A stretch of DNA of 64,000 bases, taken from assembly GCF_000143415.4 (NCBI RefSeq), contig NW_003314377.1, positions 310,001-374,000 of the forward strand. Reading direction: 5' to 3'. Of the stretch, positions 8,276-59,050 are shown piece after piece (position 1 is the stretch's first letter; each line of letters starts with the position of its first letter). The stretch is from Selaginella moellendorffii (taxonomy: Eukaryota; Plantae; Lycopodiophyta). The notes beneath the pieces are model-generated. The model was given only the letters and a program-made list of their open reading frames with translations, had not been told where the DNA came from and ran no database searches. Made by a program: the position numbers and the translations under genes.

Positions 8276-10007
8276 TGTAAGCGACTAAATTTTCCATTCT
8301 ACTTTAGTCACTTAACCACACCTCCGACCACTTGGAGGAGTCTCATTCACAACCTCCATCAGTCCAATTCAGGACTTGGGACTTGCTAGCCCCAAGAATG
8401 GCATCCATGCCACTCCACACTTGCACCTGGTCCAAGTGCTCCACGTGTCCGGTCCTGAGACCGACACCCAAAGGTACCACTAACATCTCGGCCCGTTACG
8501 CTAAGGCCATGGCCATTCACCTTTACTGCACTAGTGGTTCAACACCACTTGCATCACCACCCCGTCTCTCCAAGACTGGGCCATGTGTCCACGAGTGGTC
8601 ATCCTAGATCCACTCCTTAGCATCCTTAGGATGCCCACAGACCTGGGGAGCTGCCTTCCCCAAAGTCCCTTTGTCAGTTCCTACCAAGTCCCTTTCTGCC
8701 CCTGGCCGTGTTTGCCAACACTGCCACTGGATCGAGGCCCACAGGCACGACCACTAAGTCCCACGGTCCTCTGGGACTTCCTCACCACATGACTGTGTCC
8801 TTGGTCACTACCCCAGAGGACTGCTCCTCTTCCTTTCCACAGTCTGGGCCTTTGGGACAACATTTCGGAACACCGTGGCCTTACGCGAGCCACCTGGGTA
8901 CTCTCCCCATCTATCGCCTTTAGGTGCTCTAGCCATGGGCTTAGAGCGGGTTCCGTTGAGCCACACCAGGTATCCAAGTAGGTAGTGCCACCCACACTTG
9001 GACTGGGAGCATCGGCCAGTCGATCTCCCGGGGGAACTAGAGCCGGCTCTTGAACACTTCACCAAGCTACCCCGCTTGTCGGTCCGTGTTCACTCTAGTC
9101 TTGGACTTCCCAGTGGGCAGCTCATCACCCAACACTGGGTCCGGCCTTCCTGGGCCAAACTGGCCTTTCCTGGCCAAACTGGCTCCACTGCAGTCCTCCC
9201 CCTACTATACTTTTGGGGCTCACCAAACCCCCCAGGGTCTGGGAGACGAACGCTTTGGGCTTTCACCCTCTCAGGCTCCGGACTCGGACTCGGACTCGGA
9301 CTCGGACTCGGACTCGGATTCGGACTCGGACTCGGGCTCGGGCTCGGTCTCGGCCTCGGCCTCGGTCTCGGTCTCGGTCCCGATCTCGGTCTCGGTCTCG
9401 GTCCCGGTCTCGGTCCCGGTCTCCGTCTCGACTTCGGACTCCATCTCGGACTCCATCTCGGACTCCATCTCGGGTCCATCTCGGACTCCATCTCGGACTC
9501 CATCTCGGGTCCATCTCGGGTCCACCTCGGACTCCATCTCGGACTCCATCTCGGGTCCATCTCGGACTCCACTTCGGACTCCAACTCGGGTCCATCTCGG
9601 GTCCACCTCGGACTCCATCTCGGACTCCATCTTGGACTCCATCTCGGACTCCACTTCGGACTCCAACTCGGGTCCATCTCGGGTCCACCTCGGACTCCAA
9701 CTCGAGTCCATCTCGGACTCCACTTCGGACTCCAACTCGAGTCCATCTCGGACTCCAACTCGAGTCCATTTCGGACACTCCCACGTGTCATGTGTTGGTC
9801 CTTTTGGGTCCCTTTTTGGAGCCTCGCCTTTTGCTCGCTTCGTGCTCGTTCCTCGAGCACTTCGTTGGGAGTTCCACTCCCGCTCTTGACTTTTCAAGTC
9901 GGAGCTTTTGGTCCAAACGTGTTACGCTCGTTTGGCTCTCGCTTCGGCCACTACCATGTGGCGCCCTTCCGGCTCCACTTTGGGGCCTAGGGATTTTGTG
10001 TCTCACA
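8276..10007 (-). repeat. 5' LTR of element B (1732 bp) with expanded minisatellite at ~9279-9778
   Basis: Adjacent to the PBS. 92 bp longer than the 3' LTR, and the difference lies in the tandem array. Confidence 0.95.
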
Positions 10008-37543: not shown

Positions 37544-37902
37544 GCTTGGTTGTTGGTGACGCATCCTATCTACACTGGGGGGCGTATATTCGCGAGGCGA
37601 GAAATGGCTATGGAGGTTCCATCTAGTTCTTCCAGTCAATCCATAGCGCGCTCTGCCCTTTGGCGCTGACACTCGCGATTGGATCGTCAGGTACTGGTTG
37701 GATCGGTGATGGATTAGCGGCTTAGCTGAACGGCACAAGGCAGATTTCTTGGTTCTTTGGATCACGATCGAGGATTCCAGCGAAATATCGGAGAATCGAT
37801 CGCCAAATCTTGGCATCGACGGCCATTTCCATCGAATCGACCGATATTTCGGCCAAATCTTGCGGCATCGACGGCCATTTCCACGAATCGATCGATCCAG
37901 CA

Positions 37903-39219
37903 ATGACGAAGCCATGCGATGCGTGCCAGTCGGGGAATGCAGTGATCTACTGCCGGGCGGACGCGGCCTTCCTGTGCTGTTCTTGCGACAACAAGGTCCA
38001 CTGCGCCAACAAGCTCGCGTCGCGACACGAGCGCGTCCTCGTCTGCGAGGTCTGCGAGCACGCCCCGGCGGCGGTCACCTGCAAGGCGGACGCGGCGGCG
38101 CTGTGCGTCACCTGCGACAGCGATATCCACTCCGCCAATCCCCTCGCCCGCCGCCACGAGCGCGTGCCAATCACGCCCTTCGTCGACTCTAGCGACGGCG
38201 GCGCCGCTCCTCCTCCAGCTCCGCCAATCCTCCACGACACCGGCAACGCGAACCACGTCAAAGCCCAGGACCACCACGACCAGCAGCAGCAATGCAGCTA
38301 TCTTCTCAAGGACGAGGACGAGGACGACGAGGAGGAGAGCTCCGCTGCGGAGGCCGCGTCGTGGCTCCTCCCACAGCCCAACAATCTCGCCAAGAGCGAT
38401 GGAGAGAAGCTCGGCGGCGGCGGTGGCAGTGGCGGCTCCAGCGATGGCGGCGCTGGAGACGGCGACTCCAACGATCCCGACGACTTTGCTGGCGGAGGCG
38501 ATGGTGGCGGCGATGTTGGAGTGGAGAGCACCGACTTCTACTCCACTCTCAAGCCATCGGCACCTCCGCCCCTCCGGATCGAGAAGCTCCTCCTCAAGTC
38601 CCAGGCCGCGGCCAACTTCGATCTCTTCTCGGACGAGGACTCCTACTTGGACATGGACTTCCTGGGCGCGCTCCACTCGGTCACCGACAGCTTGGTTCCA
38701 ATCCACACCACCGGAGGAGCTCTCCACTCCTCCTCGCCAGTGGGATCCAACGCCGACTCATACGATCTCGACGTCCACGACAAATCACCTCCACACGCCT
38801 ACTGCCCCGGCCTGAGCCTCAGCGTAAGTTCTTCACAAGCTCTCTCTTTTCACGTTTATAATCTTCGCTCTTTCCTCCGCCAGGCATCCTCGATCGATGT
38901 TGGAGTCGTCCCGGACGCAAGCTTGAGCGACATCTCAACTCCCCAGAGCCGGCCGACTTCTTCGTCAGTGTTTGGCAGCGGCGAGGCGCAGGCGGCGGCG
39001 GCGCCACTCCACCACGCCACTCCCCTCGAGCCGATCGCGCGGGAGGCCAGGGTGCTGCGCTACAGGGAAAAGCGCAAGAACAGGAAGTTTGAGAAGACGA
39101 TAAGGTACGCTTCTCGCAAAGCTTACGCTGAGACCCGGCCCAGGATCAAAGGAAGGTTTGCCAAGCGAGGCGAGATGGACTCTTACGATGCCTCCTTTGG
39201 CGTTGTTCCTTCCTTTTGA
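37903..39219 (+). CDS. COL: CONSTANS-like protein (two B-boxes, VP motif, CCT domain)
   Basis: CDAC...[76 protein letters not shown]. Intron 38824-38883. Confidence 0.96.
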
Positions 39220-39548: not shown

Positions 39549-41955
39549 TCAGCTCAGCCACCTCGCCACGCCATCGTCCTCTCCCACGGCTGCCAGTACC
39601 TCCATTGACACGTCCATGGACACCTTTATGAGTTGTGACAGTGAGGAGTCAGTGAAAGAGAGAAAAATGAAAGAGACGCCGCGCTGGATAGCGCTACTTA
39701 CCCCTCTGAATTTGCTATTCACGAGCGTACAGTCGCTCAGCTGGGACCCTTCGAGCACCCAGCTCTCCCACATATCGAAATTGTGGTTGAGGAACACGAG
39801 CTCCGATTTCTTGTTGGACTGCACACACACATAAAAGCATTGACAGGAGATAAAACATAAGATCGAGGAGAACCTGTAGAAGCTTTCCACCAGCAGCCAG
39901 TGATCTCAAACCAAGACGATCCTGAAACCAAAGAGAAGAACATAGAAATGTTTAGTCCTGTGTAAGAGAGCTATGGAAAAATGAAAAAAAACGTACTCTA
40001 TTTCGTAGCACCACGAGGAACTGAGCAGCAGGATCTCTGGGAGTGACATCCGACATGACGTCCAGGCACCACCTTCGTCCGGGACCTTTCTGCCGAGCAA
40101 CGTAGTAACCATTCCCAGTCACTGGACGGACAGCAACGACGTAGCCTTCCTTCAGCACATCGATCGCTTGAAGGTCCTGCACGGACTCGCTAGCCGGTTT
40201 CTCCGAGCTCACGTCCGCGTCTTCGCGTCGGGCCTTGGAATCGTCGGGCGAGGTGAAACGGGAAGTTGAATTCACCGCTTGGTCTCTCCCGCTTGTGCCC
40301 CCGGGATCATCTCTTTGCAATGCCACCCAGTTAGCATCTCTCTCCGGAACTGGGAACGATTCTGGCACCTGGTGAGATTTCCGTCTCGAGCCCCTCTTCT
40401 TCGACTTCTTTCCCGATTTGTTGTACATACTGCGAGCCTCGCGGATCTCCTGTGGCGGATAAACAAGCTGCTTCCGGTGAAACTGCTGGCCGGTCTGCGA
40501 GTCTGCAATCCACTGATCGTCTTCTTTGGCACTTTCTCTCTCGAACCGCTCATGCTTCTCTTCCTGCCAGTCCTCTTCGTCCTCTGAAACAGAACTCGCA
40601 GGAATAACTCCATTGACAAGATAGGACCTCAGCAGAGAAAATGCCTTTAACCGGATTTCGTTCCACGCATCGTCACTGTAATCGGCACTCCGAGGAAGAA
40701 TTAACACGTTTGACATCTCCCTGACCTGTAGAAACACGAGTCAAGTTCCAAACATGTCGCATAAAAAAACCAGGTGCTTACCCACGCTTCCAGCCATTGC
40801 GGACCTTCGACGCCATCCAAAGCGCAGCCAGCAATGATGCCGTCAATGAGAGCTTGCTTCACAGCGCAGTCGTCGAGTAGATGGCAGCTGCTTGAATTCA
40901 CAATAATAGCCCCTGAGCGAAAGCACGCTGAGCTCGTCAACAAAAATTCGTGTAACACTAGAATGCGGTCATTCACGCATGGCATGCAAACGAAACCAAA
41001 AAAGAAAAAGAGAAAAAGGGTACCTGGTTTGATGTACTGCAAAGCTTCGGCGTTTATAATCTGGACGGTGTCGTTGGTGAGCGGGCAGTGAAGCGAAACC
41101 ACATCACTTTGAGAAAGAAGCTCATTCAGACTTTCCACTTTGGTAGCAAACGCAGGAAAAGACTTGCGAGTCTGCTCTTTCACCTGATAGAAAATCCACA
41201 AACAAAGTTAGCAGCTCCCTCGAAAGCACCATCAAAAAAAAATCCACAACAAAGTTAGCAGCTCCCTCACAAGCACTAAGGAAAAAAAAAATTCTTACCT
41301 CTTCGGTCTCATAGTATATCACTCTCATCTTAAACGCCAGGCAGCGAACCGCAAGAGCACAGGCGGATGGCGTCCGACCAACGATCCCCATGACGAGCCC
41401 CCGGCATCTCCTCATCCCCTTGCACAGCGGCTGGATCGATCCCAGCCAGCCAGCGCTTGCAAATCCCTGAGCCGAGAGAGAATGCGTGTGCCTCAGCAAT
41501 CCCAGGAGCAACGCCATGACCGTGTCGGCAATCTCCTCGCCCCTCCCACAATCCACATGAACGAGCTTGAGTCCCATCTCGGCCGCCGCGGCGGAATCCG
41601 CCGGCTTGTTAATAGATCCCAGGCAGAGAATCAGCTGCCAGGGCTGGAGCCGCCGCTGCGCCGCGCGGGGGAGATCCAGGGAATGGATGATCACGGCCGC
41701 CGCAGTCTCCAGCTTGCCCTCGGCAATCTGCGCGAGGTTGAGGTGCTCCAGCGTCGCAATGCCGGCCAGAGCATCGGCATTGAGGATCTGCCAATCCTCG
41801 AGGCAATTCAGCGCGACGACGAGAGGAAGCCCAGGGATCCCCGCCGCCGCTGCCCCGGCCACTTCCTTGACGATCTTGCTGCTGTTGCCCACTGCGTAGC
41901 TCGGATTTTGCGAGGTGGCGCCATTGCCGGGGGAGCTCACATCGACCTTGGTCAT
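39549..41955 (-). CDS. AN: ANGUSTIFOLIA (plant CtBP/BARS-like), multi-exon
   Basis: PLVVALNCLED, EEIADTVMALLLGLLR, GWLGSIQPLCKGMRRCRGLV, SDVVSLHC, DGVEGPQWLEAW, VLILPRSADYS. Confidence 0.95.
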
Positions 41956-42209
41956 CCTGGCTTGCAAATCTGGCCAATGCTCCCTCTAGGCTCTGGATTT
42001 CCCCCGCATTCTCTCCTGGATGCCAAAGCCCTAGCTAGCCCTAGCCCTAAAACTTGGCATTTATGAATAATCTTTATTTTATTCTACTATAGAGAATCGA
42101 GCCCGAAACGTTTGTTTAGAGAGGCCGATGTCCTAACTGACTGGTCTAAGCTGTTTTTGTGAGCTTGCGAGCCAGAATAGCGGCTACTTATTGAGCAAAA
42201 TATTTGCAT

Positions 42210-42311
42210 AAAAGTCCTTGTTGAGTGGACCCTTCGGCATCGAACCCGGGTCTTGTACAACGGTTTACCTCTACACTTACCTGATAGCCATCATCTCGGC
42301 AACCGGGTTCC
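42210..42311 (-). ncRNA. Putative Pol III tRNA-derived small RNA, copy 1 (unassigned family)
   Basis: Minus strand carries A-box-like TTGCCGAGATG (42292-42302), B-box GGTTCGATGCC (42236-42246), and a GTCC/GGAC hairpin followed by TTTT. Three near-identical copies with diverged flanks. Confidence 0.65.
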
Positions 42312-42689
42312 CGTAATAAAAAAATCATACCATGTACTTGAACCATGTGTCTTTGCGAAATCCATTTAGATCGCCCATTATCCCGCGCATTCGTCCTGCT
42401 GGGCGTTTCGTCCCCGTCTGGTTTTAGTAGGACAGGATTTAGATGAATCGATCATCGTGGCAGCGCTCTATCGCCTCGCCGCCCACCCTCTCCCATCGCG
42501 GTTCTAAATGCTTCTCGCGAAGGAAGGAAAATTTCACAGGAGTGATTCAAACTAAAATCGAGCAGACCCTCTTGGCTCACTGAGAGTAAAACAATGCTCT
42601 CCTCGGCTGCGCCTTACCGTGTATCAGGCTTCCTCCAGGAGTTTCACAGAGTCAGCGGGAAAAGGCAGCACTGGCAGAGAGTGGCACAA

Positions 42690-43866
42690 GCAACAAAAGG
42701 TTTGAATAAGCTCTACATTTTTCCTCCCATTTCATTGCCACCATGGCCGCTGACTGCTGTAAAACTTCTAATGCTAGCTTTAGTATTGAACACAAGAAAG
42801 TGTAACATTAGCTTGCCATCCAGCAACTTTGCGCTGCTTCGTTTTCACCAAGATTGATAAAAGATAAAAACAACCAGTTCCAAGCCTGAAGCCTCATGAT
42901 AAATCCAGCTCAAGAAGAAAGTTTTTAACTTCCCAGGCTGTACATATTGAAAACTCTCCTCCATGGATCTAGCAAAGCGCAGCTAGATCGATTTTTAACA
43001 GCCGGAAGCTATAAGAGAAGCTCTCCCAAAGCTCCTGGGTTACCTTGTTGGCTCGCGTTTCTCTTTGTGTGGTGGATGGGAAACGCAAGCGTCTACATTG
43101 TTCTCTCGAAATACCTCTGGAGTAGTCTGGACAGAATGATTTCTCCGAGAGCCCATTTACAGCCACACCAATTATCACCACCAGTATCATCACTTCGTTT
43201 CTCAGCCACTTGATGAGCTTTTGGCGCTTCTGCTTCCCAAGAGCGTATGGACAGATGAAATCCACGGTTTTGCATCCGGAGGATGCTCGTCGATGTGAAG
43301 AAATCCCTGCATGAATGGAACAGCAACATCAAGATCTCTTCCAAAACAATCAGCAATATCACAAACCTTGTCATACTGGATCGTCAATGTTGCAATAGAA
43401 ACTCGCAGAGCAATCTCCACGGCAGCAGGAGCTTTGCGATCTTCCGCTGGTGTGACTCTCATCAGTCTGAACTCCACGTTTCGGGCATCCTGTAGGTGTG
43501 GCCATACAAACAAACATACCACGGAACCATCTGGAGGATCATAATGTCATACCTGGAAACAGTCCCGGGAGCATCTTTTGCCCGAAACGAAATGACGATG
43601 GATCCCCTTGCATTCTCGCTGTCAGCCAAGGGCGAGCCCAAGACCAATCCACCGGAGCTCTCCAAGTTCAAACTCGCTGTGTGTGCCATAAAAGAGAGCC
43701 TGAAGACGACGCGAGCACCCGACTTGGAGCAGAACTGAGGCTAAAAACACGATTATCCACGAAGTTGGTGCCTGTTTCGACCAAATGCTTCGCCAAGCTC
43801 TCCTCCAGCTCCAAATGGACACTACTTGTAGTTGCAAGCGGGCACTTGCCTTCCAGCTTTGTTTGA
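42690..43866 (-). pseudogene. Inverted, deletion-riddled copy of the 3' part of PIG-T, including an intron and 3' flank
   Basis: KLEGKCPLATTSS, TPAEDRKAPAAVEIALRVSIA and QGFLHIDEHPPDA match 45700-47460 in reverse. Frameshifts and deletions. Confidence 0.9.
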
Positions 43867-43876
43867 GACAAACATC

Positions 43877-43945
43877 CGGCTTGCCCTCGGCAGCAATCTG
43901 CACGAGGTTGAGGTGAATCCTTCAGCGCGACAACGTAGCTCGGCT
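43877..43945 (-). pseudogene. Collapsed fragment of AN exon 1
   Basis: GCTTGCCCTCGGC, GCAATCTGCACGAGGTTGAGGTG, TTCAGCGCGAC and GTAGCTCGG match separate parts of 41710-41905. Confidence 0.8.
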
Positions 43946-44098
43946 TGTGCACCTCGGTCAAATATTTATAATATCGAGAAAAGAATCGAACCAGAAACAT
44001 ATGGTTTGGGAGACTGAGGTCCTAACTGACTGGTCTAAGCTCTTTTAGTGAGCTGGCGAACCAGAATAATGGCTCCTTATTTAGTAAATTTTTTGCAT

Positions 44099-44200
44099 AA
44101 AAGTCCTTGTTGAGTGGACCCTTCGGCATCGAACCCGGGTCTCGTACAACGGTTTACCTCTACACTTACCTGGTAGCCATCATCTCAGCAACCGGGTTCC
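44099..44200 (-). ncRNA. Putative Pol III tRNA-derived small RNA, copy 2
   Basis: 3 substitutions vs copy 1, two of which preserve the 5' stem on the minus strand. Confidence 0.65.
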
Positions 44201-44790
44201 AATAAAAAATATCATACCATGTAGTTAAACGGGTACCCGAGGAGATTATTCCCCGTCCCTGAGAGGCGCGAATCGGTGGTGATTCCATCCGAGCTGGCAG
44301 CGAGCGCCTCGAATGCGCCTCTTTTCTCCTGGTTCCAGTAATAAAATATCGTACCATCTACTTGAACCAATATGACAATATGGGTGCATTCGAGGCTGGC
44401 GTTTCGTCTTTGGGAGAATCCCTTCCAGATTTTGGAGCTAGGAGGACAGGATCTACCGAGGGAACGATCTCGTGCTTGATTGCCATGGCCACGCTCAATC
44501 ACCTTGCCTCTTCCAGGATGCTTGATGCCAGGAACAAGAAGCGAGCGGCCGGATGAAAACTCTCGTGGAAGCCTGCCAAGGAGCTCCATCGCGATTCTAA
44601 ATGAAGCGCGCGATGGCACTCGCGGGCTCCCAACAGGCTTGTGCCTACGGTCCTGTGGCTATACGTTTTCAGCGCTAATTCTCGACAGGGAGCTCCACGA
44701 GCTTGACTACTCACATTTTAGGGCTCTTGAGATTGAGATTATTCCAGTAATATTCTTACTGTACGGTAGAACTTGGAAGAACCCTAAAGT

Positions 44791-46951
44791 ATGGATCTTC
44801 CTTTTGCCCTTGCTTTTGTTCTTCTTCTGACCTCTTGCTATGCGATCGATGAGGACTTTTCCGAGGAGCTGTTGCTGCGTCCGCTCCCCGACGGCAATGT
44901 GCTCGCTCATTTCCACTTCGCCAGCACATTGCCGCCCGTCGATCACTACGGCGTGCATCACCGGCTCTTCCCCAAGGCCATCTTCCAGCTCGTAAGTCCT
45001 CAAATCCCTTCTCCAGGAAACGATGATAAGAGAATCGCTTGGAACAGGTCCGGAAGTTTCGAATCAAGGAAATGGAGCTCTCCTTCACGCAAGGGCGATG
45101 GAACTACCAGCGCTGGGGCGTGGGCGATCCGATCGCACAGCTCGCCGCCAAGCCAGTGGGAGTGGAGCTTACGGCATCTCTCGACGTTCCAGAGGCAGAG
45201 GTGGATTCGACGTGGGGAAACCTCACGCACGCTCTCTCGGGCCTCTTTTGCGCCTCGATCAACTTCCTCGAGTCGCCAACTACGTTCTTGGAGCCGTGGT
45301 TCTCGTGGAGGCCCGAGGCAAACTGGACAGGAGGAGGAGGAGCTTTCGACGCTCCCGGCGTGAAGAGGGTGGTGAAAGGAAAGAAATGGAGCAAGAGCTC
45401 GAGAACCAGGTATGGAGCACTCCCGAGAGAAGCAGTCTGTACGGAGAACCTCACGCCATGGCTCAAGCTTCTCCCGTGTAGAGACAAGGCTGGGCTCACG
45501 ACGCTCCTGGACAGGCCGACGATTTACAGTGGTATGTACCATTCCCAGAGGCTGATTATCACTTCCGGTGACTTCGATCGAGACGAAGAAGGCACGACGT
45601 TGGAGCAAACCTTGACGGTTGTTTTGCGAAAGCCAGCAGTTTCAGAAGGTCTGTCTTCCAAGCTGCAAGACTGGACACTCTCCGGGTTGTTTGGCTCAAA
45701 GCTGGAAGGCAAGTGCCCGCTTGCAACTACAAGTAGTGTCTATCTGGAGCTGGAGGAGAGCTTGGCGAAGCACTTGGCTGGAGATCTCAGCAAAGAAACA
45801 CGCATCAACTTCGTGGACAATCGTGTTTTCAGCCTCAGCTCTGCTCCAAGTCGGGTGCTCGCCTCCCTTTCAGGCTCTCTTTTACTCGAGTATGAAGCTG
45901 GCACGCACAGCGAGCTTGATCTTGGAGTCACTTGGAGAGCCCCGGTGGATTGGTCTCCTGCTCGGGGTCGGTTCTACACAAGCCGGTACTTGGCTGGCAG
46001 CGGGAATGCAAGGGGATCCATCGTCATTTCTTTTCGGGCAAATGATGGTCCTTCTGGGGACTGTTACTCTCCAGGTATCGAGGCAGTCGAGTACGTCGAC
46101 ATTATGATCCTCCAGATGATACCGTGGTATGTTCGTTTGTATGGCCACACGCTACAGGTTTCGTTGGATGGCCGAAACGTGGAGTTTTGGTCCGTGGTTA
46201 GACTGATGAGATTCACACCAGCAGAAGATCGCAAAGCTCCTGCTGCTGTGGAGATTGCTCTGCGAGTTTCTATTGCAACCCAGGCCGTAACTCTGACGAT
46301 CCAATATGACAAGGTTTGTGATATTGCTGGTTGTTTTGGAAGAGATCTTGATGTTTGCTGTTTCATTCATGCAGGGATTTCTTCACATCGACGAGCATCC
46401 TCCAGATGCAAACCGTGGATTTGATCTGCCTTCCGCAGTTATCACTTTCCCAAGGTGCCGTGTGTTCAAACAATTCCAAAGTGATGATGTCGGTCACTCG
46501 CACATTTTGGCTGTTGTTCAGGTAGTCGATTGTTTTGTTTTTCCAAGTCCGAGTTTTGTCTTTGCTCTCCTCTTACAGAGCCAGCGTCCAATGCAAATAT
46601 ATAGCGAAGTTTCATTGATGCAACTGGCCACACCGGATTTCAGCATGCCGTACAACGTGATCACCCTGACGTGCACAGTTCTTGCGCTGTACTTTGGCTC
46701 GCTGTTAAACGCTCTGAGGCGAAGGATAGGCGAGGAAGAACGAGAAAGCAAAGGTACCTAGAGTTATCTCCCCATCCATTCCAAGCTCTCGTTCTTATGC
46801 CATTTGTTCTTGACAAGCAGAAGGGAAGAAGGCGGGGCTTCTGAGCCAAAAGCTCAAGTGGCTGAGAAACGAGAAGCACATGAGAGTGATCAAGGTGATA
46901 CTGGTGGTGATAATTGGTGTGGCTGTAAATCACTACTTGAGCTCGTCATGA
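44791..46951 (+). CDS. PIG-T: GPI transamidase subunit PIG-T/GPI16, multi-exon
   Basis: Signal peptide, FSEELLLRPLPDG, SGLFCASIN, LPREAVCTENLTPWLKLLPC, PPDANRGFD, LATPDFSMPYNVI, C-terminal TM segment. Confidence 0.96.
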
Positions 46952-48619: not shown

Positions 48620-50275
48620 TATGCATAAAACATAAAAATAAAAAAAATCATAACCCATATTATGAAACATTTGTATTTCCCATGATAACATTTATGATAT
48701 TTTTAGCATGTCTAGGTGGTTTTTCAACAGCATAGTGAAGAGTTACTATTAATCTTGATAATAGTATAGCATAATATAAGTTTCCAAAGTTTAGTGAAAT
48801 ACAAATTCATAAAGTTTCACCAAAGAGTAAATTGTACAAACATCATTTTAATATTGATGTTTCTACTTTTTTTCCAAATGTCATGCCATTGGAATATCAT
48901 TGGAGCACCAAAATAAACTTTTATAAACTTTGAATTCAATATATTAAACTAATCAATTTAGGATATAATTATTATACTTACAATTATCTAAAGAAAAAAG
49001 AAACTATACCTTTTATTTATTCTATAGTATACACAATAGAAAAAAATATTTTAACTTTTAATTTTTGAAATTCAAAATATATATAAATTTCTCTTTTAAA
49101 GTGAATATGGTAGCTACTCCTTGTTCTAAAATTTTAATTTCATTATAATCTATAATAAAATATTTTAAGTTTTAGTAAATATAAAAACTCTAGTTTAACA
49201 AATAAAAATTATATTTTTTATATAAAACATTAATCTCTTTGTAAAAAGGACATTTGTCAATTAAGCTACCCTTCTCAATATCATTTTTGTATAAGACAAT
49301 TGCAATAACATCATTACAAGCAAGTAAATCAAACTAACTACCAAATTTCTAAATTGAAAAATATACAATAAACATGCCTTATTCATAATAGGTATTGATT
49401 TAGGCAAGTAGTAGATGCAACTTCTTGATTTAAATGAAAGTGCTTCCTCTAATTAAATTAAGTTTACTCAATTTCTTAGTGCTTAAATTGTTATGTCACA
49501 TTGAATGGTGAGCCATTAAATATATACTTACAAATTCCTAATTAAGTATATATATATATTGAGTTCTAGTATTCGTGAATTTGAAATTTTATGATGCTGA
49601 TTTCTACATTGTACCATCAAAAGGTTTATTTATCCTATTTATATATCTAATATTTAAGGTATATATAAAAAAAATTTAATAAACTATTTCTTAATAGGAG
49701 ATATGCATAATATAAAAATTAAAAACTAATTTTGAATGCTCATATTAATAAATGTTTGTATTGTTGTGATAACATTTATGACATTGTTAGTATATTTGAG
49801 TGGTTTTTCAACAGTAGAATGAAAAGTTATTACCAATATTTCTAATGTTATGACACATTATATGTTTTCAGTGTTTTGCAAAACAAAATTTTATGGAATT
49901 TCACTAAAGAGTAAAGATTGATATTTTTACTGCTTTTTCTAAATGCCACACCATTGAAACTTCATTAGAGCACATAAATAAAATTTATAAACTCTAAATT
50001 TATTATATAAAACAAATAAATTTATGATATAATTGTTATGTTTACAATTTTCTAAAGCAAAAATAATTTATAAAATTTTAAAAAGATATATAAGTTTCTT
50101 TTGAAGTGAATATAATATTTAATCCTTGTTCTAACTTTTTAAATTAATTGTAATCTAACATAAAAAATGAGTAAATATATAGAGTTTCTAGTTTAACAAC
50201 TACAGCAAAGTCATTTGTCTTAGAAGATAATTGCAATAACATTGTTGTAGGCAACAAAGTCAAACTACTTGCCAA
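48620..50275. repeat. Diverged AT-rich direct repeat (~48620-49345 and ~49700-50275)
   Basis: Collinear shared blocks TGATAACATTTATGA, GTGGTTTTTCAACAG, AAGAGTAAA, CCTTGTTCTAA, CTAGTTTAACAA and AATTGCAATAACAT. Confidence 0.75.
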
Positions 50276-50394
50276 ATAGAAGAAATTTTTGCATAGGATA
50301 AATAAACCTCCTTAAATGGAATGATCTAAAAAGCAACAATTGAATTAAGCTATAAAATCTCAAATTCACAAATACTAGGACTAACAACATATAC

Positions 50395-50900: not shown

Positions 50901-51629
50901 TTTTTTCACATTAAAGCCTTCCTTTCTTAATAATGTTATGAAAGATCAGTAGTCCAGTGGTGCCATGCAAAAGAATATTTGTGATAGTTACTCATTTTAT
51001 GCCCTAGATAACAATTGAAAGTTCGTGGCATTTGGTGCGGTGACAACTGGGACGCTTCCAGATAGAACAGAAAGTGGTAGTTCTGCACCATCAAGCTCCT
51101 GCTGCTCTCACTAGCAATAATCAAGAGGTACGAGAGATTTAGTTCTCCTGTGGCAGATCAATGCACCATGGAAGTCTGGCTAGTAAATATCCTTGATGCG
51201 TCTCAAGAATCGGGGTGATTTTTGGGTGCTAAAATCGGGAGGAGTATCAAGCTCGGGCAGGACGGCAGTCTCTCCGAGAAAAAGCGGGCTTGTTTGATTC
51301 CCCCAAACCCACCAGGCACATGGAGAACTTCGTCCACTTGAGCTGCCTGAGGATGGAATTGCCTGTTCGTGACAGGAATGGATGGTGAATGTGTGGCGTC
51401 GATGCTCCAAGCACAGCCCTGAACCTGGAAAGATCACACCGAAAGCTTACAAAGTCTACTTCTCTGGAAGTTCATACCTCTCAACCTTGGTCCCTGAAAA
51501 CGTATCCCGCCGCCAGGGCGCCAAACACAAGGTCAGCGTCGAGAAAGCTACACTGCGAGGAGGAGGAGGAGCGACAGGAGGAGCGCCTGCGATCGATCAT
51601 GTCTTGTCAATGGAATCAGACGAGACAAG

Positions 51630-51765
51630 AGAATCAGCTGCCAGGGCTGGAGCCGCCGCTGCGCCGATAGGCCAGGAAATGGATTATCACAGCCGCCGCA
51701 GTCTCCAGCTTGCCCACGTCAATCTGCGCAACTCCAGCGTCGCGATGCCAGAGCATCCGCATTGA
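51630..51765 (-). pseudogene. Second AN exon-1 fragment
   Basis: AGAATCAGCTGCCAGGGCTGGAGCCGCCGCTGCGCCG... matches 41627-41783 with deletions. Confidence 0.88.
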
Positions 51766-51927
51766 TGATCGACGATGATTCAGTATTTGGTATTTACAAA
51801 TATCGGGAAGAGAATCGAACCCGAAACGTTTGTTTTGGGAGACCGATGTCCTAAATGACTGGTCTAAGCTGTTTTTGTGAGCCGGCGAACCAGAATAATG
51901 GCTCCTTATTTAGCAAAATTTTTGCAT

Positions 51928-52029
51928 AAAAGTCCTTGTTGAGTGGACCCTTCGGCATCGAACCCGGGTCTTCTACAACGGTTTACCTCTACACTTACCT
52001 GATAGCCATCATCTCGGCAACCGGGTTCC
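51928..52029 (-). ncRNA. Putative Pol III tRNA-derived small RNA, copy 3
   Basis: 1 substitution vs copy 1. Confidence 0.65.
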
Positions 52030-52204
52030 CGTAATAAAAAAATCATACCATGTACTTGAACCATATGACAGGGGTCTTTGCGAAATCCATGGCGTTTTTG
52101 TTAGATCGCCCACCAGACGAGATTATCCCCCGCATTCGTGCTGCTCGGCGTTTCGTCCTTGGCAAAGCCCCCTCTTGGGTTGTGAATCGATCATCGTGGT
52201 AATA

Positions 52205-53450
52205 GATCGTCAAGAGTTATGGCCTGGGTTGCAATAGAAACTCGCTGAGAAATCTCCACAGCCGCAGGAGCTTTGCGATCTTCTGCTGGTGTGAATCTCA
52301 TCAGTCCCAAAACTCCACGTTTTGGCAATCCAACGAAACCTGTAGCGTGTGGCCATTCAAACGAACATACCTCGGTATCATCCTCGGCTGCCTCGATGCC
52401 TGGAGAGTAACAGTCCCGGGAAGAACCATCATTTGCCCGAAACGAAATCACGATGGATCCCCTTGCATTCCCGCTGCCAGCCAAGTACCAGCTTGTGTAG
52501 AACTGAGCCCGAGCCGGAGACCAATCCACCGGGGCTGTCCAAGTGATGCCGAGATCAAGCTCGCTGTGTGTGCCAGCAAAAGAGAGCCTGAGGAGGACGC
52601 GAGCACCCGACTTGGAGCAGGGCTGAGACTGAAAACACGACTGTCCATGAAGTTGATGCCTGTTTCTTCGCTGAGATCTCCAGCCAAGTGCTTCGCCAAG
52701 CTCTCCTCCAGCTCCAGATAGACACTACTTGTAGTTGCAAGCGGGCACTTGCCTACCAGCTTTGAGCCAAACATGCTGGAGAGTGTCCAGTCTTGCAGCT
52801 TTCGGAAAACAACCTGCTCCAATGTCATGCCTTCTTCGTCCCGATCGAAGTCACCGGAAGTGATAAGCAGCCTCTGGGAATGGTACATACCACTGTAAAT
52901 CGTCTGCCTGTCCAGGAGCGTCGTGAGCCCAGCCTTGTCTCTACATGGGAGAAGCGTGAGCCATGGCGTGAGCCGTGGCGTTCTACAGAGTGCTTCTCTC
53001 GGGAGTGCTCGCTCTTGCTCCATTTCTTTCCTTTCACCGCCCTCTTCATGCCAGGAGCGTCGAAAGCTCCTCCTCCTCCTGTCCGGTTTGCCTCGGGCCT
53101 CGACGAGAACCACGGCCCCAAGAACGTAGTTGGCAATTCGAGGAAGTTGATCGATGCGCAAAAGAGGCCCGAGAGAGCAGCTCGCCGCCAAGCCAGTGGG
53201 AGTGGAGCTCACGGCATTTCCAGAGGTGGACGTCGACGTCCAGCCAACGACGTGGGCTGCGCGATCGGATCGCCCACGCCCCAGCGCTCGTTGTTCCATC
53301 GCCCTTGCCATTTCTTTGATTCGAAACTTCCGGACCTGTTCCAAGCGATTCTTTCATCATCGTTTCGGGATTTGAGGACTTACGAGCTGGAAGATCGACA
53401 AAAGAAAGGGCAAAAGGAGGATAGGGTTCGATTTTACCTCTCAAAAGCCT
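52205..53450 (-). pseudogene. Inverted PIG-T pseudogene (5' two-thirds)
   Basis: EQVRKFRIKEM, RLTPWLTLLPCRDKAGL and YLAGSGNARGSIVISFRANDG. Retains intron 1. Frameshifts and an internally flipped segment near 53175-53235. Confidence 0.92.
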
Positions 53451-53599
53451 CGACCACTGAGAAACGTACTTGGAGTAAGAGTTCGCACCCTTGGAGGCAT
53501 GGAGGGCAATGAGATCACTCTTCTGAAGGCCATGGGTGTTTGCACTGTGCTGGGAGATTCTCTCCAAGGGCAAGTAAATCTGTGCTTGAATTCTTTCTA

Positions 53600-56500
53600 G
53601 TAGTTGAGTTTATATGTATGGAAAGTGTGGGCTCATTGAGATGCATTTGATTGAGCAGGATGAAACACGATGATCAGTGTGTACGTGTTGCATGAGTGTG
53701 GTAAGCAAGCAATCCACCTCTATGCATACTTATGTCTAGAAGGGACAAAATGGGTTGATGTTTTGCCAGGTAGCAATTTTGTCTCTACCCAGGTTGTTCT
53801 TATTAGCATGTATATTGAGTGCAATAGTCTTGAAGTTCAAGTATCTTTTAGTGGAGTTTTGAGCCTTGGACAATTGTCATTTAGCACATATAGTTGGCAT
53901 GGAAAGTTGCAATATACATTTGTGATAGAGCAAAATGCACTAGGAAGGCTTGAGATAAAAAAAATGTGATGAATGATGGGATAAAGTGAAAGTGATAGAT
54001 CCAGAAAACAATTGAGAACTCACCAAGAAATCGTAAAAGCTCATATATGAAAAAAGTTGATGCAACCTTGTGGCTGAAATCCAAGCTGGAACCCATGCAC
54101 CAAGGTAGTAAAACCTGAAGACAAAAGAGAAGAGGTGAAAGAAAATGGAGAAAAAAGAAAAAGAAAAAAGAAGTCATTACATTAATGCTTTGAGGTGGCA
54201 ATGATTGTGAGCATGTGGAAGCTCATGGCCAATTTTATTGGCGAGCACATATGAACCACCCTCCACTTAGCACTAGATGAAGTAGAGGCTAAGCCACTGT
54301 GAAGAAAATTTGGAGGATGAAGTGAACTTTTTGAGAAGAACAAGTTGTTCAGGAGAAAAGATGATTAAACTAGGAACTTTGGAGTCAATGTCTGCCTTGG
54401 TTTGCTCAATTGAAGCCCTACATTGCTCATCAAGGGCAAGGATCTTCATGTCACGAGCATGAAGCTTGTCCATGTTGGAAAGTTGGAAGTTTGTAGTATG
54501 GCGCAAAGATAGTGCAAGCAATAATACTTGGAAATCTATGAAAGTACAAGTAGTCTAATCAAATAAAGAGGCTAGGCTACTCTCACTCATAATCATTGTT
54601 CCCACTTCAAAGGTCACGGACACCATAGAATGCACGTGCTTTATTGGAGTACCATGATGAAGGCTCTAAGATTAAGCTGCAATTGAGAGGAGATCCTCCA
54701 CATAAGGTCCACACTTGAAAAGAAATGATGTCATCAGAAGAGCCTCCACTAGGAAGATTGGCAACTCTTGAAGTTGGCCATCACTCTGATCAAACTAAGT
54801 GTTTGCTATGATAAGTGGGAAAGCCTGTGTAAATAGTATTGCACTGGAACATGTTGAACTCAGGCTGTGATGGATCTTCGATCAACTCAAGAAAGATAAC
54901 AATCAGCGAGTGGGGAAAGGGTGTCGAGGAAGATAATATTGGCTTGAAGGATATTGATTGGCTTTGAGATAGTCCTAGAGGCTATTCTTGAAGCTTTCCC
55001 AACAAAGAGTGTCCACAAGCATTATAGAAACAAGAAGTTCAGTGATTGTCGCTAATCTCTATTATGCCGAGTGACCAATTTGTAATGCCTCAAACCTAAT
55101 CATGCCAAACTTGTCCAATGATGAGGGAGTCCTTCAAAGGTGTGGAGCTGAACTTTTGGTAGTTTACCACCACAAAGTTCAAAAAAGATTCCACCCCATT
55201 AATGTAAACTCGAACACTACATCAAATGCCCGTGGGGATAACAATGTAGTTTGCAAACATCTTTAGGATCAGAGTTGTGCTTCTAGAGACTCGAAAACCT
55301 GCTCTTGTGGCTGAAGAGATCACATTTCTCCCAAATCCAAAATTGACAAAAGCATTGATGATGGGAGAACTATCGCCAAAGCCTATAGGTGCAAAAATTG
55401 CATCTAGATTAGAAGAGGAGGCTGTGTCAATGATGTGCACATCCAATAGGAAAGAGGCTATGGCTTTAGTAGACCTTGTAAAGTCCTTTAGATGCTATCT
55501 AAAGCTAGGAATCATACATGAAAGCTCACACCACAAAAAGGTGACAAATGTTTCCATCAATTGTTGAAGTGCACACTCCAAGTCCCTACCAAAGGAAGGT
55601 GCAAGATATTTGGGAAGGAGAGGCGTGAATGGGAGTTTGCATGCCACCTTTAGTGTTGGATTAGTGATTGCTGAAGGAGCTGGATCGCCATCAATTTTCT
55701 CTTGATCAGTTGTTTTCTTCTTTTGTGCTCATGTGGCTATTGTCTTTGCAAACTCTTCCTTGGGATCTTGATTGCATTGACTTGTCCCATTAGAGATTTT
55801 CCTTTGTTGGAAGATGACGAAGGTACATCCTCGATTGCATGCTGCTCAAGCTGTTGTTAGTAGCAATCCTTTGCTTGTGTTATAGTGCTATTATCAGTGA
55901 ATGGTTGCTCTTGGAGACATTGAAAACATGGTGGTCACAGCTCTAGATAAAGCTTCCAACACCTCTCTATGCTGTGAGTTGTGATGTTGCAATGGGAGCA
56001 ATACTATAAGTGACTAAGTTTTCCATTTTACTTTAGTCATTTAACCGCATCTCCGACCACTTGGAGGAGTCTCATTCACAACTTCCATAAGTCCCAGTTA
56101 GGACTTGGGGCTTGCTAGCTCCGAGAATGGCATCCATGCCACTCAACCTTTGCACTTGGTCCAAGTGCTCCACGTGTCTGATCCCATGACTGACACCCCA
56201 AAGCACCACTGACATATCGGCCCGTTACGCTAAGGCCATGCCCATTCACCTTGGTCACACTGGTGGTCTAACGCCACTTACATCATAGTCCTATCTCTCA
56301 AAGACTGGGCCATCCGTCTGTGAGTGATCATCCCAGATCTACTCCTTAACATCCTTAGGATGCCCGTAGACATGGGGAATAGCCTTCCCCGACAACTCTT
56401 TTCCAGTCCCCACCAAGTCCCTTTCTGTCCATGGCCGTGTTCGCTAACACTGCCACTAGATCAAGGCTCACAGGCTCGACCTCTAAGTCCCACTATCCTT

Positions 56501-59050
56501 TGGGACTTCTTCATCATGTGACCATATCCTTGGTCACTGCACTAGAGGACTGCTCCTCTTCCCTTTCACCGTTTGGGACTTTGTGATAACATTCCAGAAC
56601 ACCGTGGCCTTATGCAAGCCTCATGGGTACTCTCCCTGCCTTTCGCCTTTAAGTGCTCTAGCCATGGGCTTAGAGTTAGGTTCCGTTGAGCCACGCCAGG
56701 TATCCAAGTAGGTAGTGCCACCCACACTTGGACTGGGAGCATTGGCCAGTCGATCTCCCGGGGGAACTAGAGCTGGCTCTTGAACACTTCACCAAGTTAC
56801 CCACTTGTCGGTCTGTGTTCACTTTAGTCTTGGACTTCCCAGTGGGCAGCTCATCACCCAACACTGGGTATAGCCTTCCTGGGCCAAATTGGCCTTTCCT
56901 GGCCCAACTGGCTCCACTGCAGTCCTCCCCCTTACTATACTTTTGGAGCTCACCAAACCCCCTAGGGTCTGGGAGACAAACACTTTGGGCTTTCACCCTC
57001 TTAGACTCGAACTCGGACTCGGACTCGGACTCAGACTCGGACTCAGACTCGGACTCAGACTCAGACTCAGACTCGGACTCAGACTCGGACTCGGGCTTGG
57101 GCTCGATCTCGGCCTCAGTCTCGGCCTCGGTCTCGGTCTTGGTCCCGATCTCGGTCTCGGTCTCGGTCCCAGTCTCGGTCCTGGTCTCAGACTCCATCTC
57201 GAACTCCATCTCGGGTCCATCTTGGACTCCATCTCGGACTCCATCTCGGACTCTATCTCGGGTCCATCTCAGACTCCATCTCGGGTCCATCTCAGATCCC
57301 ATCTCGGGTCCATCTCGGACTCTTCCACGTGTCATGTTTTGGTCCTCTTGTGTCTTCTTTTCTAGAGACTCACTCATGGCTCGCCTCGTGCTTGTTCCTC
57401 GAGAACTTCGTTGGGAGTTCCACTCCCACTCTTGACCTTTTCAAGTCGAAGCTTTTAGTCTAAATGTGTTACGATCGTTTGGCTTTCACTTTGGCCACTA
57501 CCACGTGGCACCCTTTCGGCTCCACTTTGGGGCCTATGGATTTCGTGTCTCACAAATACCAAGAGTGTGGAGCACATTGTGGCTTCTCAGCCTACTGTAA
57601 GTGGTAAGTATGGAGCTCTTGAAGGATTTTCTCTTGCATTTGCTATTGTTATTAGATGATCTCCTTGTACCCTACAAGCTCTATCAAAGCCTTCTTAATC
57701 ACTGTAGGAAATTTGTCATCAGCAAGAGCAGGAGCAGTAGTTATATGAGAGATAGCTGCATATGAAGCTCCCTCAACCTTGGAGATACTAAGCTCCTAGA
57801 GAAGATCACACTCTAAAGTCTCAGCAGTTGCAAAAGTCTCATGACATATCCAAAATTACCTCTTGAGCATCTTGTGTTAGAAATTCCTCTTGAGTCTAGA
57901 GATGAATGCCGTGATACTATGAGGCTCATTGGTGATCACCTGCTGCTCCACACACTCTTTCTATAGGCACTAAAATGCATCATATACTTTAGCACTGACT
58001 CACTAGCTCTTTGTTGAAAGGCAAACAAGTCCATAAATAAACAATTTGCCGGCCACTGCTAATCAAAATGTGATTTGAATAAGGTCTTGAATGTGGTGTA
58101 GTCCACCATATCTGCCTCCAAAAAGAGTCTCTGCCCATGCTGTTGCTCAGTTAGTAAGCGATTGAGAGAGGTCTCGAAGCTTATGATCATCATCACCAAT
58201 GTCATTTGATGCATAATATTGCTCAAACTGAAGAATGTGTATCTTGGCCAAGATGTCCCCATTGCCTAATAAGTAAGGCAAGTCCATCCCATGTTGCACA
58301 ATATGAATTACAGGAGGAACTACTATAATAATGGATGCTCAAACTTGCTATTTGCCAAAGACTCTGAATCCTCCTCAGTTGAGAGAGCCATTTGATAATA
58401 TAGCTCATAATAGATATGTGAATAATGATTGTTAAACCTAAGGAATATTGCTAATAATATGCAAGCATCAAATATGTATGGATCTACTATAAACGGGCAT
58501 AAAATAATGCAGTCACTACATGTAACAAATGCTCCTAAAGAGTGAAAACTTCTTGGCTTTTGGAATGCTCTAAATCTAATGCAAAGATCTCATAGCAAAA
58601 AAAAAATGGCTAGAGAATTTAAGGAGAACCCTAAAAATTAGCACTCACCAACATTCAGAAGTTTGCAAAGACAAAAACTGTGAATATCTCAATCTCTAGA
58701 GTGCCAAAAAGCATGAGCAATAATGCATCAGAAAACCCTTGATGCCATCTACATAGCCATAAAAAGAAAAATTGGCCAAAATTGCCCAAAATTGAGCGAA
58801 AACAACTGAAACCACCCCTTGTACTCAAAATAAATGAACAAGTGGGAAATTGTTTCAAACTTTTTATATTGCCATTAAATGTTTTATGCAAGTACACAAT
58901 AAAAAGATCTGGTGAGGATTTATCCAAAACACTCAAGAAAGATGAAAGTGATGTTGAAACTAGAAAGAATAATCCCTTTAAAATCACAACTGTGTAATAT
59001 GTAATAAAAATAGCACCAAAACTCATGATTCTTTGCAAATTCCCTTGCAA
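53600..59050 (-). mobile_element. Highly decayed Ty3/gypsy element (gag-RT-integrase remnants), interrupted by a solo LTR
   Basis: Minus-strand remnants: TFKTLFKSHF (gag-like, ~58070), SPIINAFV...RAGFRV and NYIVIPTGI (RT-like, 55220-55380), KFSSQWLSLYFI (GPY/F-like, ~54280). Boundaries uncertain. Confidence 0.55.
56005..57554 (-). mobile_element. Solo LTR of family B (1550 bp)
   Basis: Homologous to 2575-4214 end to end. TSD AATAC at 56000-56004 and 57555-57559. Confidence 0.95.

What the first reader, a model, noticed from the sequence alone, without database searches (positions are those of the whole stretch)
42210..42311. Candidate undescribed 102-nt Pol III small RNA gene kept intact in three copies
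Seen: the minus strand reads GGAACCCGGUUGCCGAGAUGAUGGCUAUCAGGUAAGUGUAGAGGUAAACCGUUGUACAAGACCCGGGUUCGAUGCCGAAGGGUCCACUCAACAAGGACUUUU, repeated at 44099-44200 and 51928-52029. By hand count the core differs from copy 1 at 3/102 (copy 2) and 1/102 (copy 3) positions. The adjacent ~118-nt flank beyond the UUUU differs at ~21 and ~13 positions, and the co-duplicated AN and PIG-T sequences are shattered. It has a perfect B-box (GGTTCGANNCC), a Ser/Leu-tRNA-like A-box, and a GUCC/GGAC hairpin followed by U4. Two of copy 2's changes keep the GGUUGCC/GGCUAUC stem paired on the minus strand (C-G to U.G, G.U to G-C). GAACCC(GG) can pair with (CC)GGGUUC. Established: A/B boxes plus oligo-T define type-2 Pol III genes. 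Inference: a functional tRNA-derived RNA. It cannot form a proper cloverleaf and matches no snRNA, snoRNA, 5S, SRP or telomerase RNA that I recognise.
Basis: partly seen in the sequence, partly recalled or inferred. Interest (0 to 1): 0.88.

Follow-up and report, generated by a model that had tools for sequence, protein, structure and literature searches.

The report
Decayed tRNA-like repeat, many copies
The 102-base sequence is a decayed leucine/serine-type tRNA relic that still carries RNA polymerase III promoter signals. It belongs to a family of probably several tens of near-identical copies in the Selaginella moellendorffii genome, so it is not a three-copy orphan gene, and no discrete small RNA has been shown.

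Summary
Three minus-strand copies (42210-42311, 44099-44200, 51928-52029) differ at 3 and 1 of 102 positions, while their flanks differ by 13-20%. All carry a perfect B box, a Ser/Leu-like D-arm/A-box and a hairpin followed by T4.

The premise of "three copies" does not hold. I fetched two more copies from other S. moellendorffii scaffolds. DNA word depth over the core is about 20-90 times single-copy depth, which suggests several tens of copies.

All five assembled copies lie in one ~3.5-kb duplicated block: PIG-T pseudogene, element, AN exon-1 fragment.

Rfam gives no match. ARAGORN finds nothing at default settings and only a poor class-II cloverleaf when relaxed. The element is not the published Helenus-1_SMo TRIM.

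Positions 1-80 are a real island of conservation, with 4 variable sites among 5 copies. A second tRNA-like relic 70 nt downstream decays at the flank rate. However, the copies are mosaics of the kind gene conversion produces, there are no compensatory pairs, and one copy has lost the T4.

PolyA+ reads are sense-strand but cross the proposed 5' end. An annotated pseudogene transcript that runs up to the element probably explains them.

Verdict: a tRNA-derived, Pol III-type multi-copy element. A functional small RNA is possible but unshown.

The parts
42210..42311 (-). Copy 1 of the 102-nt tRNA-derived core. It lies 170-270 nt upstream of the AN mRNA 5' end, on the same strand.
   Evidence: AN mRNA depth falls from 50-87 to 0.15 at about 42039, and no splice joint leaves the core.
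44099..44200 (-). Copy 2 of the core. It differs from copy 1 at 3 positions, and its upstream 35 nt have diverged.
51928..52029 (-). Copy 3 of the core. It differs from copy 1 at 1 position and carries the variant found in most genomic copies at position 57.
   Evidence: At 42255 all 11 DNA contigs carry the copy-3 letter.
42236..42246 (-). Perfect B box GGTTCGATGCC in copy 1. The same motif is at 44125-44135 and 51954-51964.
42292..42302 (-). A-box-like motif TTGCCGAGATG, the relic of a Ser/Leu-type D-arm. It matches 6 of 9 specified consensus positions.
   Evidence: Read directly. ARAGORN places the D-arm here.
42275..42283 (-). CAGGTAAGT, a consensus 5' splice-site look-alike. It lies in the relic anticodon arm, where ARAGORN reads anticodon AAG or GTA.
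   Evidence: No splice joint was seen here in stranded RNA reads.
42210..42234 (-). Terminal hairpin (AAGGGUCC...GGACUUUU) that includes the T4 run at 42210-42213.
   Evidence: The T4 is reduced to TTTA in the copy on L001.
42312..42346 (-). 35 nt upstream of the core, containing a T7 run. It is identical in copies 1 and 3 and diverged in copy 2 and in the L001 copy.
   Evidence: RNA contigs of copy-3 type cover it.
42091..42209 (-). Downstream part of the ~260-nt repeat unit. It holds a second, decayed tRNA-like relic (B-box-like motif at 42094-42104) that diverges at the flank rate.
   Evidence: 27 of 122 columns vary, against 4 of 102 in the core.
44328..44377 (-). Partial fourth copy in the window: the upstream segment plus the first 6-9 nt of the core, after which the sequence is unrelated.
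41625..43877 (-). Duplicated block at copy 1: AN exon 1 (41625-41788), the element, and PIG-T pseudogene pieces (42769-43877).
51164..53775 (-). Duplicated block at copy 3: PIG-T pseudogene, the element, and an AN exon-1 fragment. It is paralogous to L001:9555-13013 and L002:9815-13413.

Best explanation
The 102-nt core is a degenerate class-II tRNA relic of leucine(AAG)/serine type. It keeps the internal signals of a type-2 RNA polymerase III gene: an A-box-like D-arm, a perfect B box about 45 nt downstream, and a T4.

It is one member of a family of probably several tens of near-identical copies in Selaginella moellendorffii. The copies in this window were not kept as three separate genes. 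They ride in a ~3.5-kb block (PIG-T pseudogene, element, AN exon-1 fragment) that has been duplicated repeatedly, within this window and onto other scaffolds.

Positions 1-80 stay almost invariant while everything around them decays. I attribute this to family-level homogenisation (gene conversion among many copies), possibly combined with selection on Pol III/TFIIIC recognition or on the RNA.

**Shown:** tRNA ancestry, the motifs, the copy number, the duplicated block, the island of conservation, the mosaic pattern, and sense-strand transcription as part of longer polyA+ transcripts.

**Inferred:** that Pol III transcribes it into a ~100-nt RNA ending at the T4, and that the conservation has any functional cause.
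For: **tRNA ancestry**
- The B box is perfect.
- The GCCGAG D-arm motif, an acceptor-like pairing of GGAACCC with GGGTCC, and a long variable region are all present.
- ARAGORN at 80% stringency draws an 86-88-nt class-II cloverleaf with anticodon AAG or GTA.

**Copy number**
- DNA contigs give word depth 482 at position 0, 2011 at position 57 and 288 at position 110, against about 22 for neighbouring single-copy DNA.
- 11 different contigs cross position 57.
- Further assembled copies are at L001:11288-11389 and L002:11499-11600.

**Duplicated block:**

**Island of conservation**
- Among 5 copies there are 4 variable sites in positions 1-80. Pairwise flank divergence is 8-20%.
- The second tRNA-like relic, in the same block, decays at the flank rate.

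**Mosaicism**
- Copies 1 and 3 show 2/83 substitutions upstream and 1/102 in the core, but 16/122 downstream.
- Copies 3 and 4 are about 97% alike over the block, yet about 17% diverged from -60 to +120, except in positions 1-60.

**Strand:** all reads on the core have the same orientation as reads of the minus-strand AN mRNA.
Against: - No discrete ~100-nt RNA was observed. The libraries are unsuited to one, and 3 of about 5 polyA+ reads, plus an RNA contig, extend upstream of position 1.
- All five assembled copies lie in one duplicated block, so truly dispersed solo copies are inferred only from word depth. Overlapping short contigs can inflate that depth about 2-fold.
- No target-site duplications or SINE-type tail were found.
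- The A box matches only 6 of 9 positions.
- The predicted fold is not unusually stable (z = -1.6), and no compensatory pair exists.
- Homogenisation confined to 80-110 nt inside a 3.5-kb repeat is itself unusual and may point to real selection.
Confidence: 0.6

Rival explanations
1. This is a genuinely functional, lineage-specific small Pol III RNA gene family, which is the reader's idea extended to many copies. Under this view a tRNA-Leu/Ser gene was re-shaped into a ~100-nt RNA with a new fold: an 8-bp helix GAACCCGG/CCGGGUUC closing a 52-nt domain, plus a 3' hairpin. Purifying selection would keep positions 1-80 invariant in every copy.
For: - The island of conservation starts within 1-2 nt of the predicted start in the two copies whose upstream region has diverged. 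Positions -1 and 0 vary, while 1-13 never do.
- There are 4 variable sites in 80 positions among 5 copies, against 8-20% divergence in the flanks.
- A neighbouring tRNA-like relic in the same block decays freely.
- 5 of 7 CpG sites in the core are kept, against 2 of 7 in the flank.
- Fast-diverging near flanks around a conserved body resemble what is reported for active tRNA genes. That comparison rests on my own knowledge and was not tested here.
- The RNA is from the sense strand.
Against: - No discrete transcript is shown.
- There is no covariation, and the fold z-score is -1.6.
- The L001 copy lost the T4 and changed positions 81, 87 and 88.
- The copy 1-copy 3 identity runs 100 nt upstream of the RNA, as a conversion tract would.
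- Many short variant contigs in the DNA run show that the family is not uniform.
Confidence: 0.22
2. The element acts, or is simply carried, as part of Pol II transcripts or as a DNA site rather than as its own gene. One form is a tRNA-like structure in the 3' UTR of PIG-T-like pseudogene mRNAs, as in dicistronic tRNA-mRNA transcripts. The other is a TFIIIC-bound B-box site between the tandem PIG-T and AN genes, acting as a boundary or terminator.
For: - The coding sequence of RefSeq model LOC112340462 (P0024) ends 14 nt upstream of copy 3's core.
- PolyA+ reads and RNA contigs run across the proposed 5' end and carry copy-3-type upstream sequence.
- S. moellendorffii had the most dicistronic tRNA-mRNA transcripts of nine land plants surveyed (PMC8166872).
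- In every copy the element sits between a PIG-T 3' end and an AN 5' end.
Against: - A promoter-only or protein-binding role would constrain the two boxes, not 80 contiguous bases.
- The host transcripts are pseudogenes.
- The functional PIG-T gene in the window has no such element at its 3' end.
- The consensus 5' splice-site motif is not used.
Confidence: 0.1
3. The element is inert. Under this view the similarity of the copies comes entirely from recent or ongoing gene conversion among paralogous blocks, and the Pol III motifs are fossils.
For: - Phylogenetic incongruence between segments. Copy 3 groups with copy 1 in the patch from -100 to +109 but with copies 4 and 5 outside it.
- The T4 is lost in one copy.
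- There is no covariation.
Against: - Conversion alone does not explain why the shared invariant segment begins at position 1 in two independently diverged copies.
- It also does not explain why the core is about 5-20 times more abundant at >=95% identity than any other part of the block.
Confidence: 0.08

Closest known systems
tRNA-derived SINEs and tRNA-pseudogene repeat families (type-2 Pol III internal promoter)
   Same: It has a tRNA-derived head with A and B boxes and a T-run. It no longer folds as a tRNA. It is present in tens of near-identical copies. S. moellendorffii is reported to have an inflated count of tRNA-like loci (1290 tDNAs, PMC2888827).
   Different: No target-site duplications, LINE-related body or A/T-rich tail were found. 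The five assembled copies arose by segmental duplication of one block, not by visible retroposition. Old copies have not decayed in positions 1-80.
Helenus TRIMs (TRIMp3), including Helenus-1_SMo of S. moellendorffii (PMC10886601)
   Same: It comes from the same genome. The layout also resembles a Helenus LTR: about 33 nt, then a tRNA-like segment with boxes A and B, then a short stretch with TTTT. The tRNA-like part is likewise judged unable to give a working tRNA.
   Different: The sequence is unrelated to the published Helenus-1_SMo LTR (its A-box motif is absent from the window). There is no second LTR, no primer-binding site, no polypurine tract and no 5-bp target duplication next to any copy.
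Cytosolic class-II tRNAs (Leu/Ser)
   Same: It shares the GCCGAG D-arm motif, the long variable region, the TTCGA T-loop, acceptor-like complementarity and an 86-nt length. ARAGORN's relaxed call gives Leu(AAG) or Tyr(GTA).
   Different: Only 2-3 pairs of the T-stem survive, and the anticodon stem has mismatches. It is not detected by ARAGORN at default settings or by Rfam's tRNA model.
Dicistronic tRNA-mRNA transcripts and tRNA-like structures in plant mRNAs (PMC8166872)
   Same: A tRNA-like sequence is co-transcribed with a neighbouring Pol II gene model, in the species with the most such cases.
   Different: Here the tRNA-like part is degenerate, the host is a pseudogene, and no mobility or processing has been examined.

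Membership tests
Type-2 Pol III gene | B box GGTTCGANNCC | tested here: met
   Perfect in all three window copies and in the L001 and L002 copies.
Type-2 Pol III gene | A box TRGCNNAGTGG, 30-60 nt upstream of the B box and about 10 nt from the start | tested here: inconclusive
   TTGCCGAGATG at positions 10-20 matches 6 of 9 specified positions. The spacing to the B box is about 45 nt. The GCCGAG D-arm motif is intact.
Type-2 Pol III gene | Run of at least 4 T shortly after the B box | tested here: met
   T4 at positions 99-102 in 4 of 5 copies. It is TTTA in the L001 copy.
Type-2 Pol III gene | A discrete Pol III transcript with defined ends | tested here: inconclusive
   Only polyA+ or unknown-type libraries could be laid. 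The few reads are sense-strand but cross the proposed 5' end.
tRNA | Cloverleaf detectable by tRNA finders or a covariance model | tested here: not met
   ARAGORN finds 0 genes at default settings. Rfam gives no hit even at E<=10. The relaxed ARAGORN cloverleaf has a 2-3-bp T-stem.
SINE | Many dispersed copies | tested here: inconclusive
   Word depth is about 20-90 times single copy, with 11 variant contigs. However, all 5 assembled copies lie in one duplicated block.
SINE | Target-site duplications and a 3' tail or LINE-derived end | tested here: not met
   No matching direct repeats flank the unit, and there is no tail beyond the T4. The flanks are homologous between copies.
Helenus / TRIMp3 | Two LTRs flanking a primer-binding site and polypurine tract, with a 5-bp target duplication | tested here: not met
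   No second LTR-like copy, no PBS-like TGGTATC motif after the unit, and no target duplication. The sequence is unlike Helenus-1_SMo.
Any described RNA family (Rfam 15) | Covariance-model match | tested here: not met
   No match at gathering scores over the window, and none at E<=10 over 42100-42420.
Spliced-leader RNA | A 5' mini-exon ending at a donor site that is joined to many mRNAs | tested here: not met
   The donor-like CAG|GTAAGT follows 31 nt. No joint or loose end was reported there, and an RNA contig of the AN mRNA ends at 42039 followed by what looks like sequencing adapter, with no leader.
Small protein gene | Conserved open reading frame with homologues | tested here: not met
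   A 52-aa ORF spans the unit in copies 1 and 3. It is broken by a stop in copy 2 (read) and has no homologue.

The most novel reading that the evidence does not exclude
A lycophyte-specific family of ~100-nt Pol III RNAs that arose from a class-II tRNA gene, lost tRNA function and took on a new fold. Purifying selection would hold it invariant over positions 1-80 in tens of gene copies while its flanks turn over quickly. That would make it a plant counterpart of tRNA-derived regulatory RNAs such as rodent BC1.
Probability: 0.2. Interest if true: 0.65.

Novelty: new member of a known kind. Interest (0 to 1): 0.35.

Why it matters
**If it is only a tRNA-derived repeat.** It is an undescribed repeat family of S. 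moellendorffii that inflates tRNA-like gene counts. It also sits 170-270 nt upstream of the ANGUSTIFOLIA mRNA start and at the end of transcribed PIG-T pseudogenes. That is useful for annotation but not surprising.

**Why the conservation is still worth explaining.** Eighty bases stay invariant inside blocks whose other parts have diverged by 10-25%, next to a sister tRNA relic that decays freely. This makes a clean natural test case for separating selection on a Pol III unit from concerted evolution. One small-RNA library and a genome-wide alignment would settle it.

Tried and rejected
- **AN 5'-UTR exon ending at CAG|GTAAGT: rejected.** AN mRNA coverage stops at about 42039, and no joint leaves 42281.
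- **U1 snRNA on the plus strand (ACTTACCTG): rejected.** There is no Rfam hit on either strand.
- **Helenus-1_SMo TRIM: rejected.** The sequence is different and there is no TRIM anatomy.
- **Solo LTR with TG...CA ends: rejected.** A 120-141-nt TG...CA unit can be drawn, but no 5-bp target duplication flanks it.
- **Small protein: rejected.** The 52-aa ORF has no homologue and is broken in copy 2. Exact-product look-ups of the ORFs found nothing (one search used a mis-set range).
- **Spliced-leader RNA:** no supporting reads.
- **Scans of other collections:** metagenome and prokaryote genome collections held no exact match to core sub-sequences.
- **Search with the C-terminal peptide of the pseudogene model, to find more blocks:** it returned only itself.
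- **Look-ups of P0024, P0003 and P0002 loci:** not on record.
- **Cross-species synteny:** could not be done, because no other Selaginella genome was reachable with these tools.
- **nhmmer with the unit and the core:** no further diverged copies in the window or in the two fetched loci.

Full report
**1. The observation**

The quoted 102-nt sequence lies on the minus strand at 42210-42311. It recurs at 44099-44200 and 51928-52029.

Copy 2 differs from copy 1 at positions 14 (C>T), 28 (T>C) and 58 (A>G). Copy 3 differs at position 57 (C>G). The 122 nt beyond the T4 differ at 25 and 16 positions. The core is therefore significantly better kept than the flank, with Fisher p = 3.5e-5 and 3.3e-4.

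- The B box GGTTCGATGCC is perfect in all copies. The window has 8 matches to GGTTCRANNCC against 1.2 expected.
- The A box is only approximate, at 6 of 9 specified positions, but GCCGAG is the Ser/Leu D-arm motif.
- The repeat unit is about 260 nt (42091-42349), not 102.
- The unit also contains a second, decayed tRNA-like relic, with a B-box-like motif at 42094-42104.

**2. What it is not**

- Rfam 15 gives no match at gathering scores over the window, and none at E<=10 over 42100-42420.
- ARAGORN finds no tRNA at default settings.
- At 80% stringency ARAGORN draws an 86-88-nt class-II cloverleaf, reading Leu(AAG) in copy 1 and Tyr(GTA) in copy 2. The T-stem has only 2-3 pairs and the anticodon stem has mismatches.
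- The striking CAGGTAAGT motif lies in this relic anticodon arm. No splice joint uses it.
- The single-sequence fold (-31 kcal/mol) is not unusual, with z = -1.6.
- With five copies there is no compensatory pair. The two 'stem-preserving' changes are one-sided transitions.

**3. Context**

The organism is Selaginella moellendorffii. The window's PIG-T gene (44791-46948, plus strand) is 99-100% identical to its annotated PIG-T protein.

The CtBP/ANGUSTIFOLIA-like gene lies on the minus strand at 39952-41967. Stranded polyA+ reads put the AN mRNA 5' end at about 42039, so copy 1 lies 170-270 nt upstream of AN and is not part of its mRNA.

Self-comparison shows that each copy sits in the same arrangement: PIG-T pseudogene pieces, then the element, then an AN exon-1 fragment. 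The blocks are at 41625-43877, at about 43875-44230, and at 51164-53775.

**4. More copies**

Fetching loci of S. moellendorffii PIG-T-like gene models gave two further copies:
- L001:11288-11389, on scaffold GL377595.1.
- L002:11499-11600, on scaffold GL377681.1.

Both lie inside the same ~3.5-kb block.

DNA contigs of a genomic run give these word depths:

| Place | Word depth |
|---|---|
| Neighbouring single-copy DNA | about 22 |
| Position 0 of the core | 482 |
| Position 57 of the core | 2011 |
| Position 110 | 288 |

- Eleven different contigs cross position 57, and all carry the copy-3 letter.
- After allowing about 2-fold inflation from overlapping short contigs, this suggests several tens of copies that are at least 95% alike.
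- The AN fragment reaches about 5 times single-copy depth.
- The PIG-T fragments reach about 5-20 times single-copy depth.

So 'three copies' is wrong. The core is the best-kept and most abundant part of an amplified block, and it may also exist outside the block. One RNA/unknown-type contig follows positions 1-64 with unrelated sequence that is absent from the window.

**5. The island of conservation**

In the five-copy alignment, positions 1-80 have four variable sites: 14, 28, 57 and 58. Other segments behave differently:
- Positions -35 to -1 are diverged in copy 2 (5/30 plus indels) and in copy 4 (7/34).
- The downstream 122 nt differ pairwise by 8-20%.
- The second tRNA relic varies at the flank rate. 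Across the whole downstream flank, 27 of 122 columns vary, and they show no excess of transitions.

This contrast within one block argues that something specific keeps positions 1-80.

The history is also mosaic:
- Copies 1 and 3 show 2/83 substitutions from -110 to -1 and 1/102 in the core, but 16/122 downstream.
- Copies 3 and 4 are about 97% alike across the 3.5-kb block, yet about 17% diverged from -60 to +120, except in positions 1-60.

These are the marks of gene conversion between paralogues. Copy 4 has also lost the T4 (TTTA) and changed positions 81, 87 and 88.

Selection and homogenisation cannot be separated with five sequences.

**6. RNA**

- Many RNA runs hold words of the core.
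- In a stranded polyA+ run, depth over the core is 0.7-3.7, against 50-87 for AN. All reads have the orientation of minus-strand RNA, and none fall in the adjacent bins.
- Three of about five reads cross position 0.
- An RNA contig runs from position 56 to -35 and then 11 nt further, into sequence that matches copy 3's upstream.
- The coding sequence of RefSeq model LOC112340462 (P0024) ends 14 nt upstream of copy 3's core.

The reads seen are therefore most simply Pol II pseudogene transcripts that run through the element. A discrete ~100-nt RNA is neither shown nor excluded, because these libraries would not capture one.

**7. Comparison with known kinds**

- **tRNA-derived Pol III repeats (SINE heads, tRNA-pseudogene families).** This is the nearest kind. 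However, target-site duplications and a tail are absent, and the assembled copies spread by segmental duplication.
- **Helenus-1_SMo.** S. moellendorffii is the only plant with a described Helenus TRIM whose LTR carries a tRNA-like segment (PMC10886601). The layout is reminiscent, but the sequence differs and there is no TRIM anatomy.
- **Dicistronic tRNA-mRNA transcripts.** The species also has the most such transcripts among nine plants surveyed (PMC8166872), which fits the read-through seen here.

**8. Verdict**

This is a tRNA(Leu/Ser-type)-derived element with Pol III-type signals, and it belongs to a multi-copy family that no source searched here describes.
- It is not a three-copy orphan gene, and the small RNA is unproven.
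- The invariant 80-nt island is the part that deserves a follow-up.

I put about 0.6 on a multi-copy tRNA-derived element kept alike by homogenisation with or without selection. I put about 0.2 on a truly functional small Pol III RNA family. The remainder goes to a role within Pol II transcripts or as a DNA site, or to an inert fossil.

Noticed in passing
window 5692-5730 (minus strand): Two perfect T-arm/B-box hairpins (GGTTCGAGTCC) lie 28 nt apart inside a repeated element. L002:5433-8782 matches window 4960-8415 at 70-75%. Other first-stage notes on this genome describe the same kind of twin T-arm motif. The sequence is unrelated to the 102-nt core.
   Followed up: partly
window 51164-53775; L001:9555-13013; L002:9815-13413: A ~3.5-kb block (PIG-T pseudogene, element, AN exon-1 fragment, plus about 1 kb more) is duplicated onto at least two other scaffolds. 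It is annotated as chimeric gene models: P0012 contains both PIG-T-derived and AN-derived peptides, and P0024 reads into the element's upstream region. Word depth suggests some PIG-T pieces are present about 5-20 times.
   Followed up: partly
window 44122-44206: One low-depth DNA contig (8.9, against 22 for single copy) joins 44122 to 44206 with 11 other letters. This would be a copy-2-like locus lacking most of core positions 1-78. The filler resembles positions 51-61, so it may be a rearranged copy rather than an empty site.
   Followed up: no
window 42188-42346 and 51906-52064 (minus strand): A 52-codon ORF spans the whole conserved unit in copies 1 and 3, starting at the ATG where the shared upstream segment begins. 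It is broken in copy 2 and has no homologue.
   Followed up: yes
window 56980-57324: A long array of 6/12-nt units (GACTCG / GACTCA, shifting to GTCTCG and to 23-nt units) lies on the plus strand.
   Followed up: no
window 48683-50277: A roughly 1-kb tandem duplication (74-77% identity) lies in an ORF-poor stretch. This stretch is also part of the homology with L001 and L002.
   Followed up: no
window 37810-39219 (plus strand): An intact CONSTANS-like gene (B-box zinc finger plus CCT motif) lies next to AN.
   Followed up: partly
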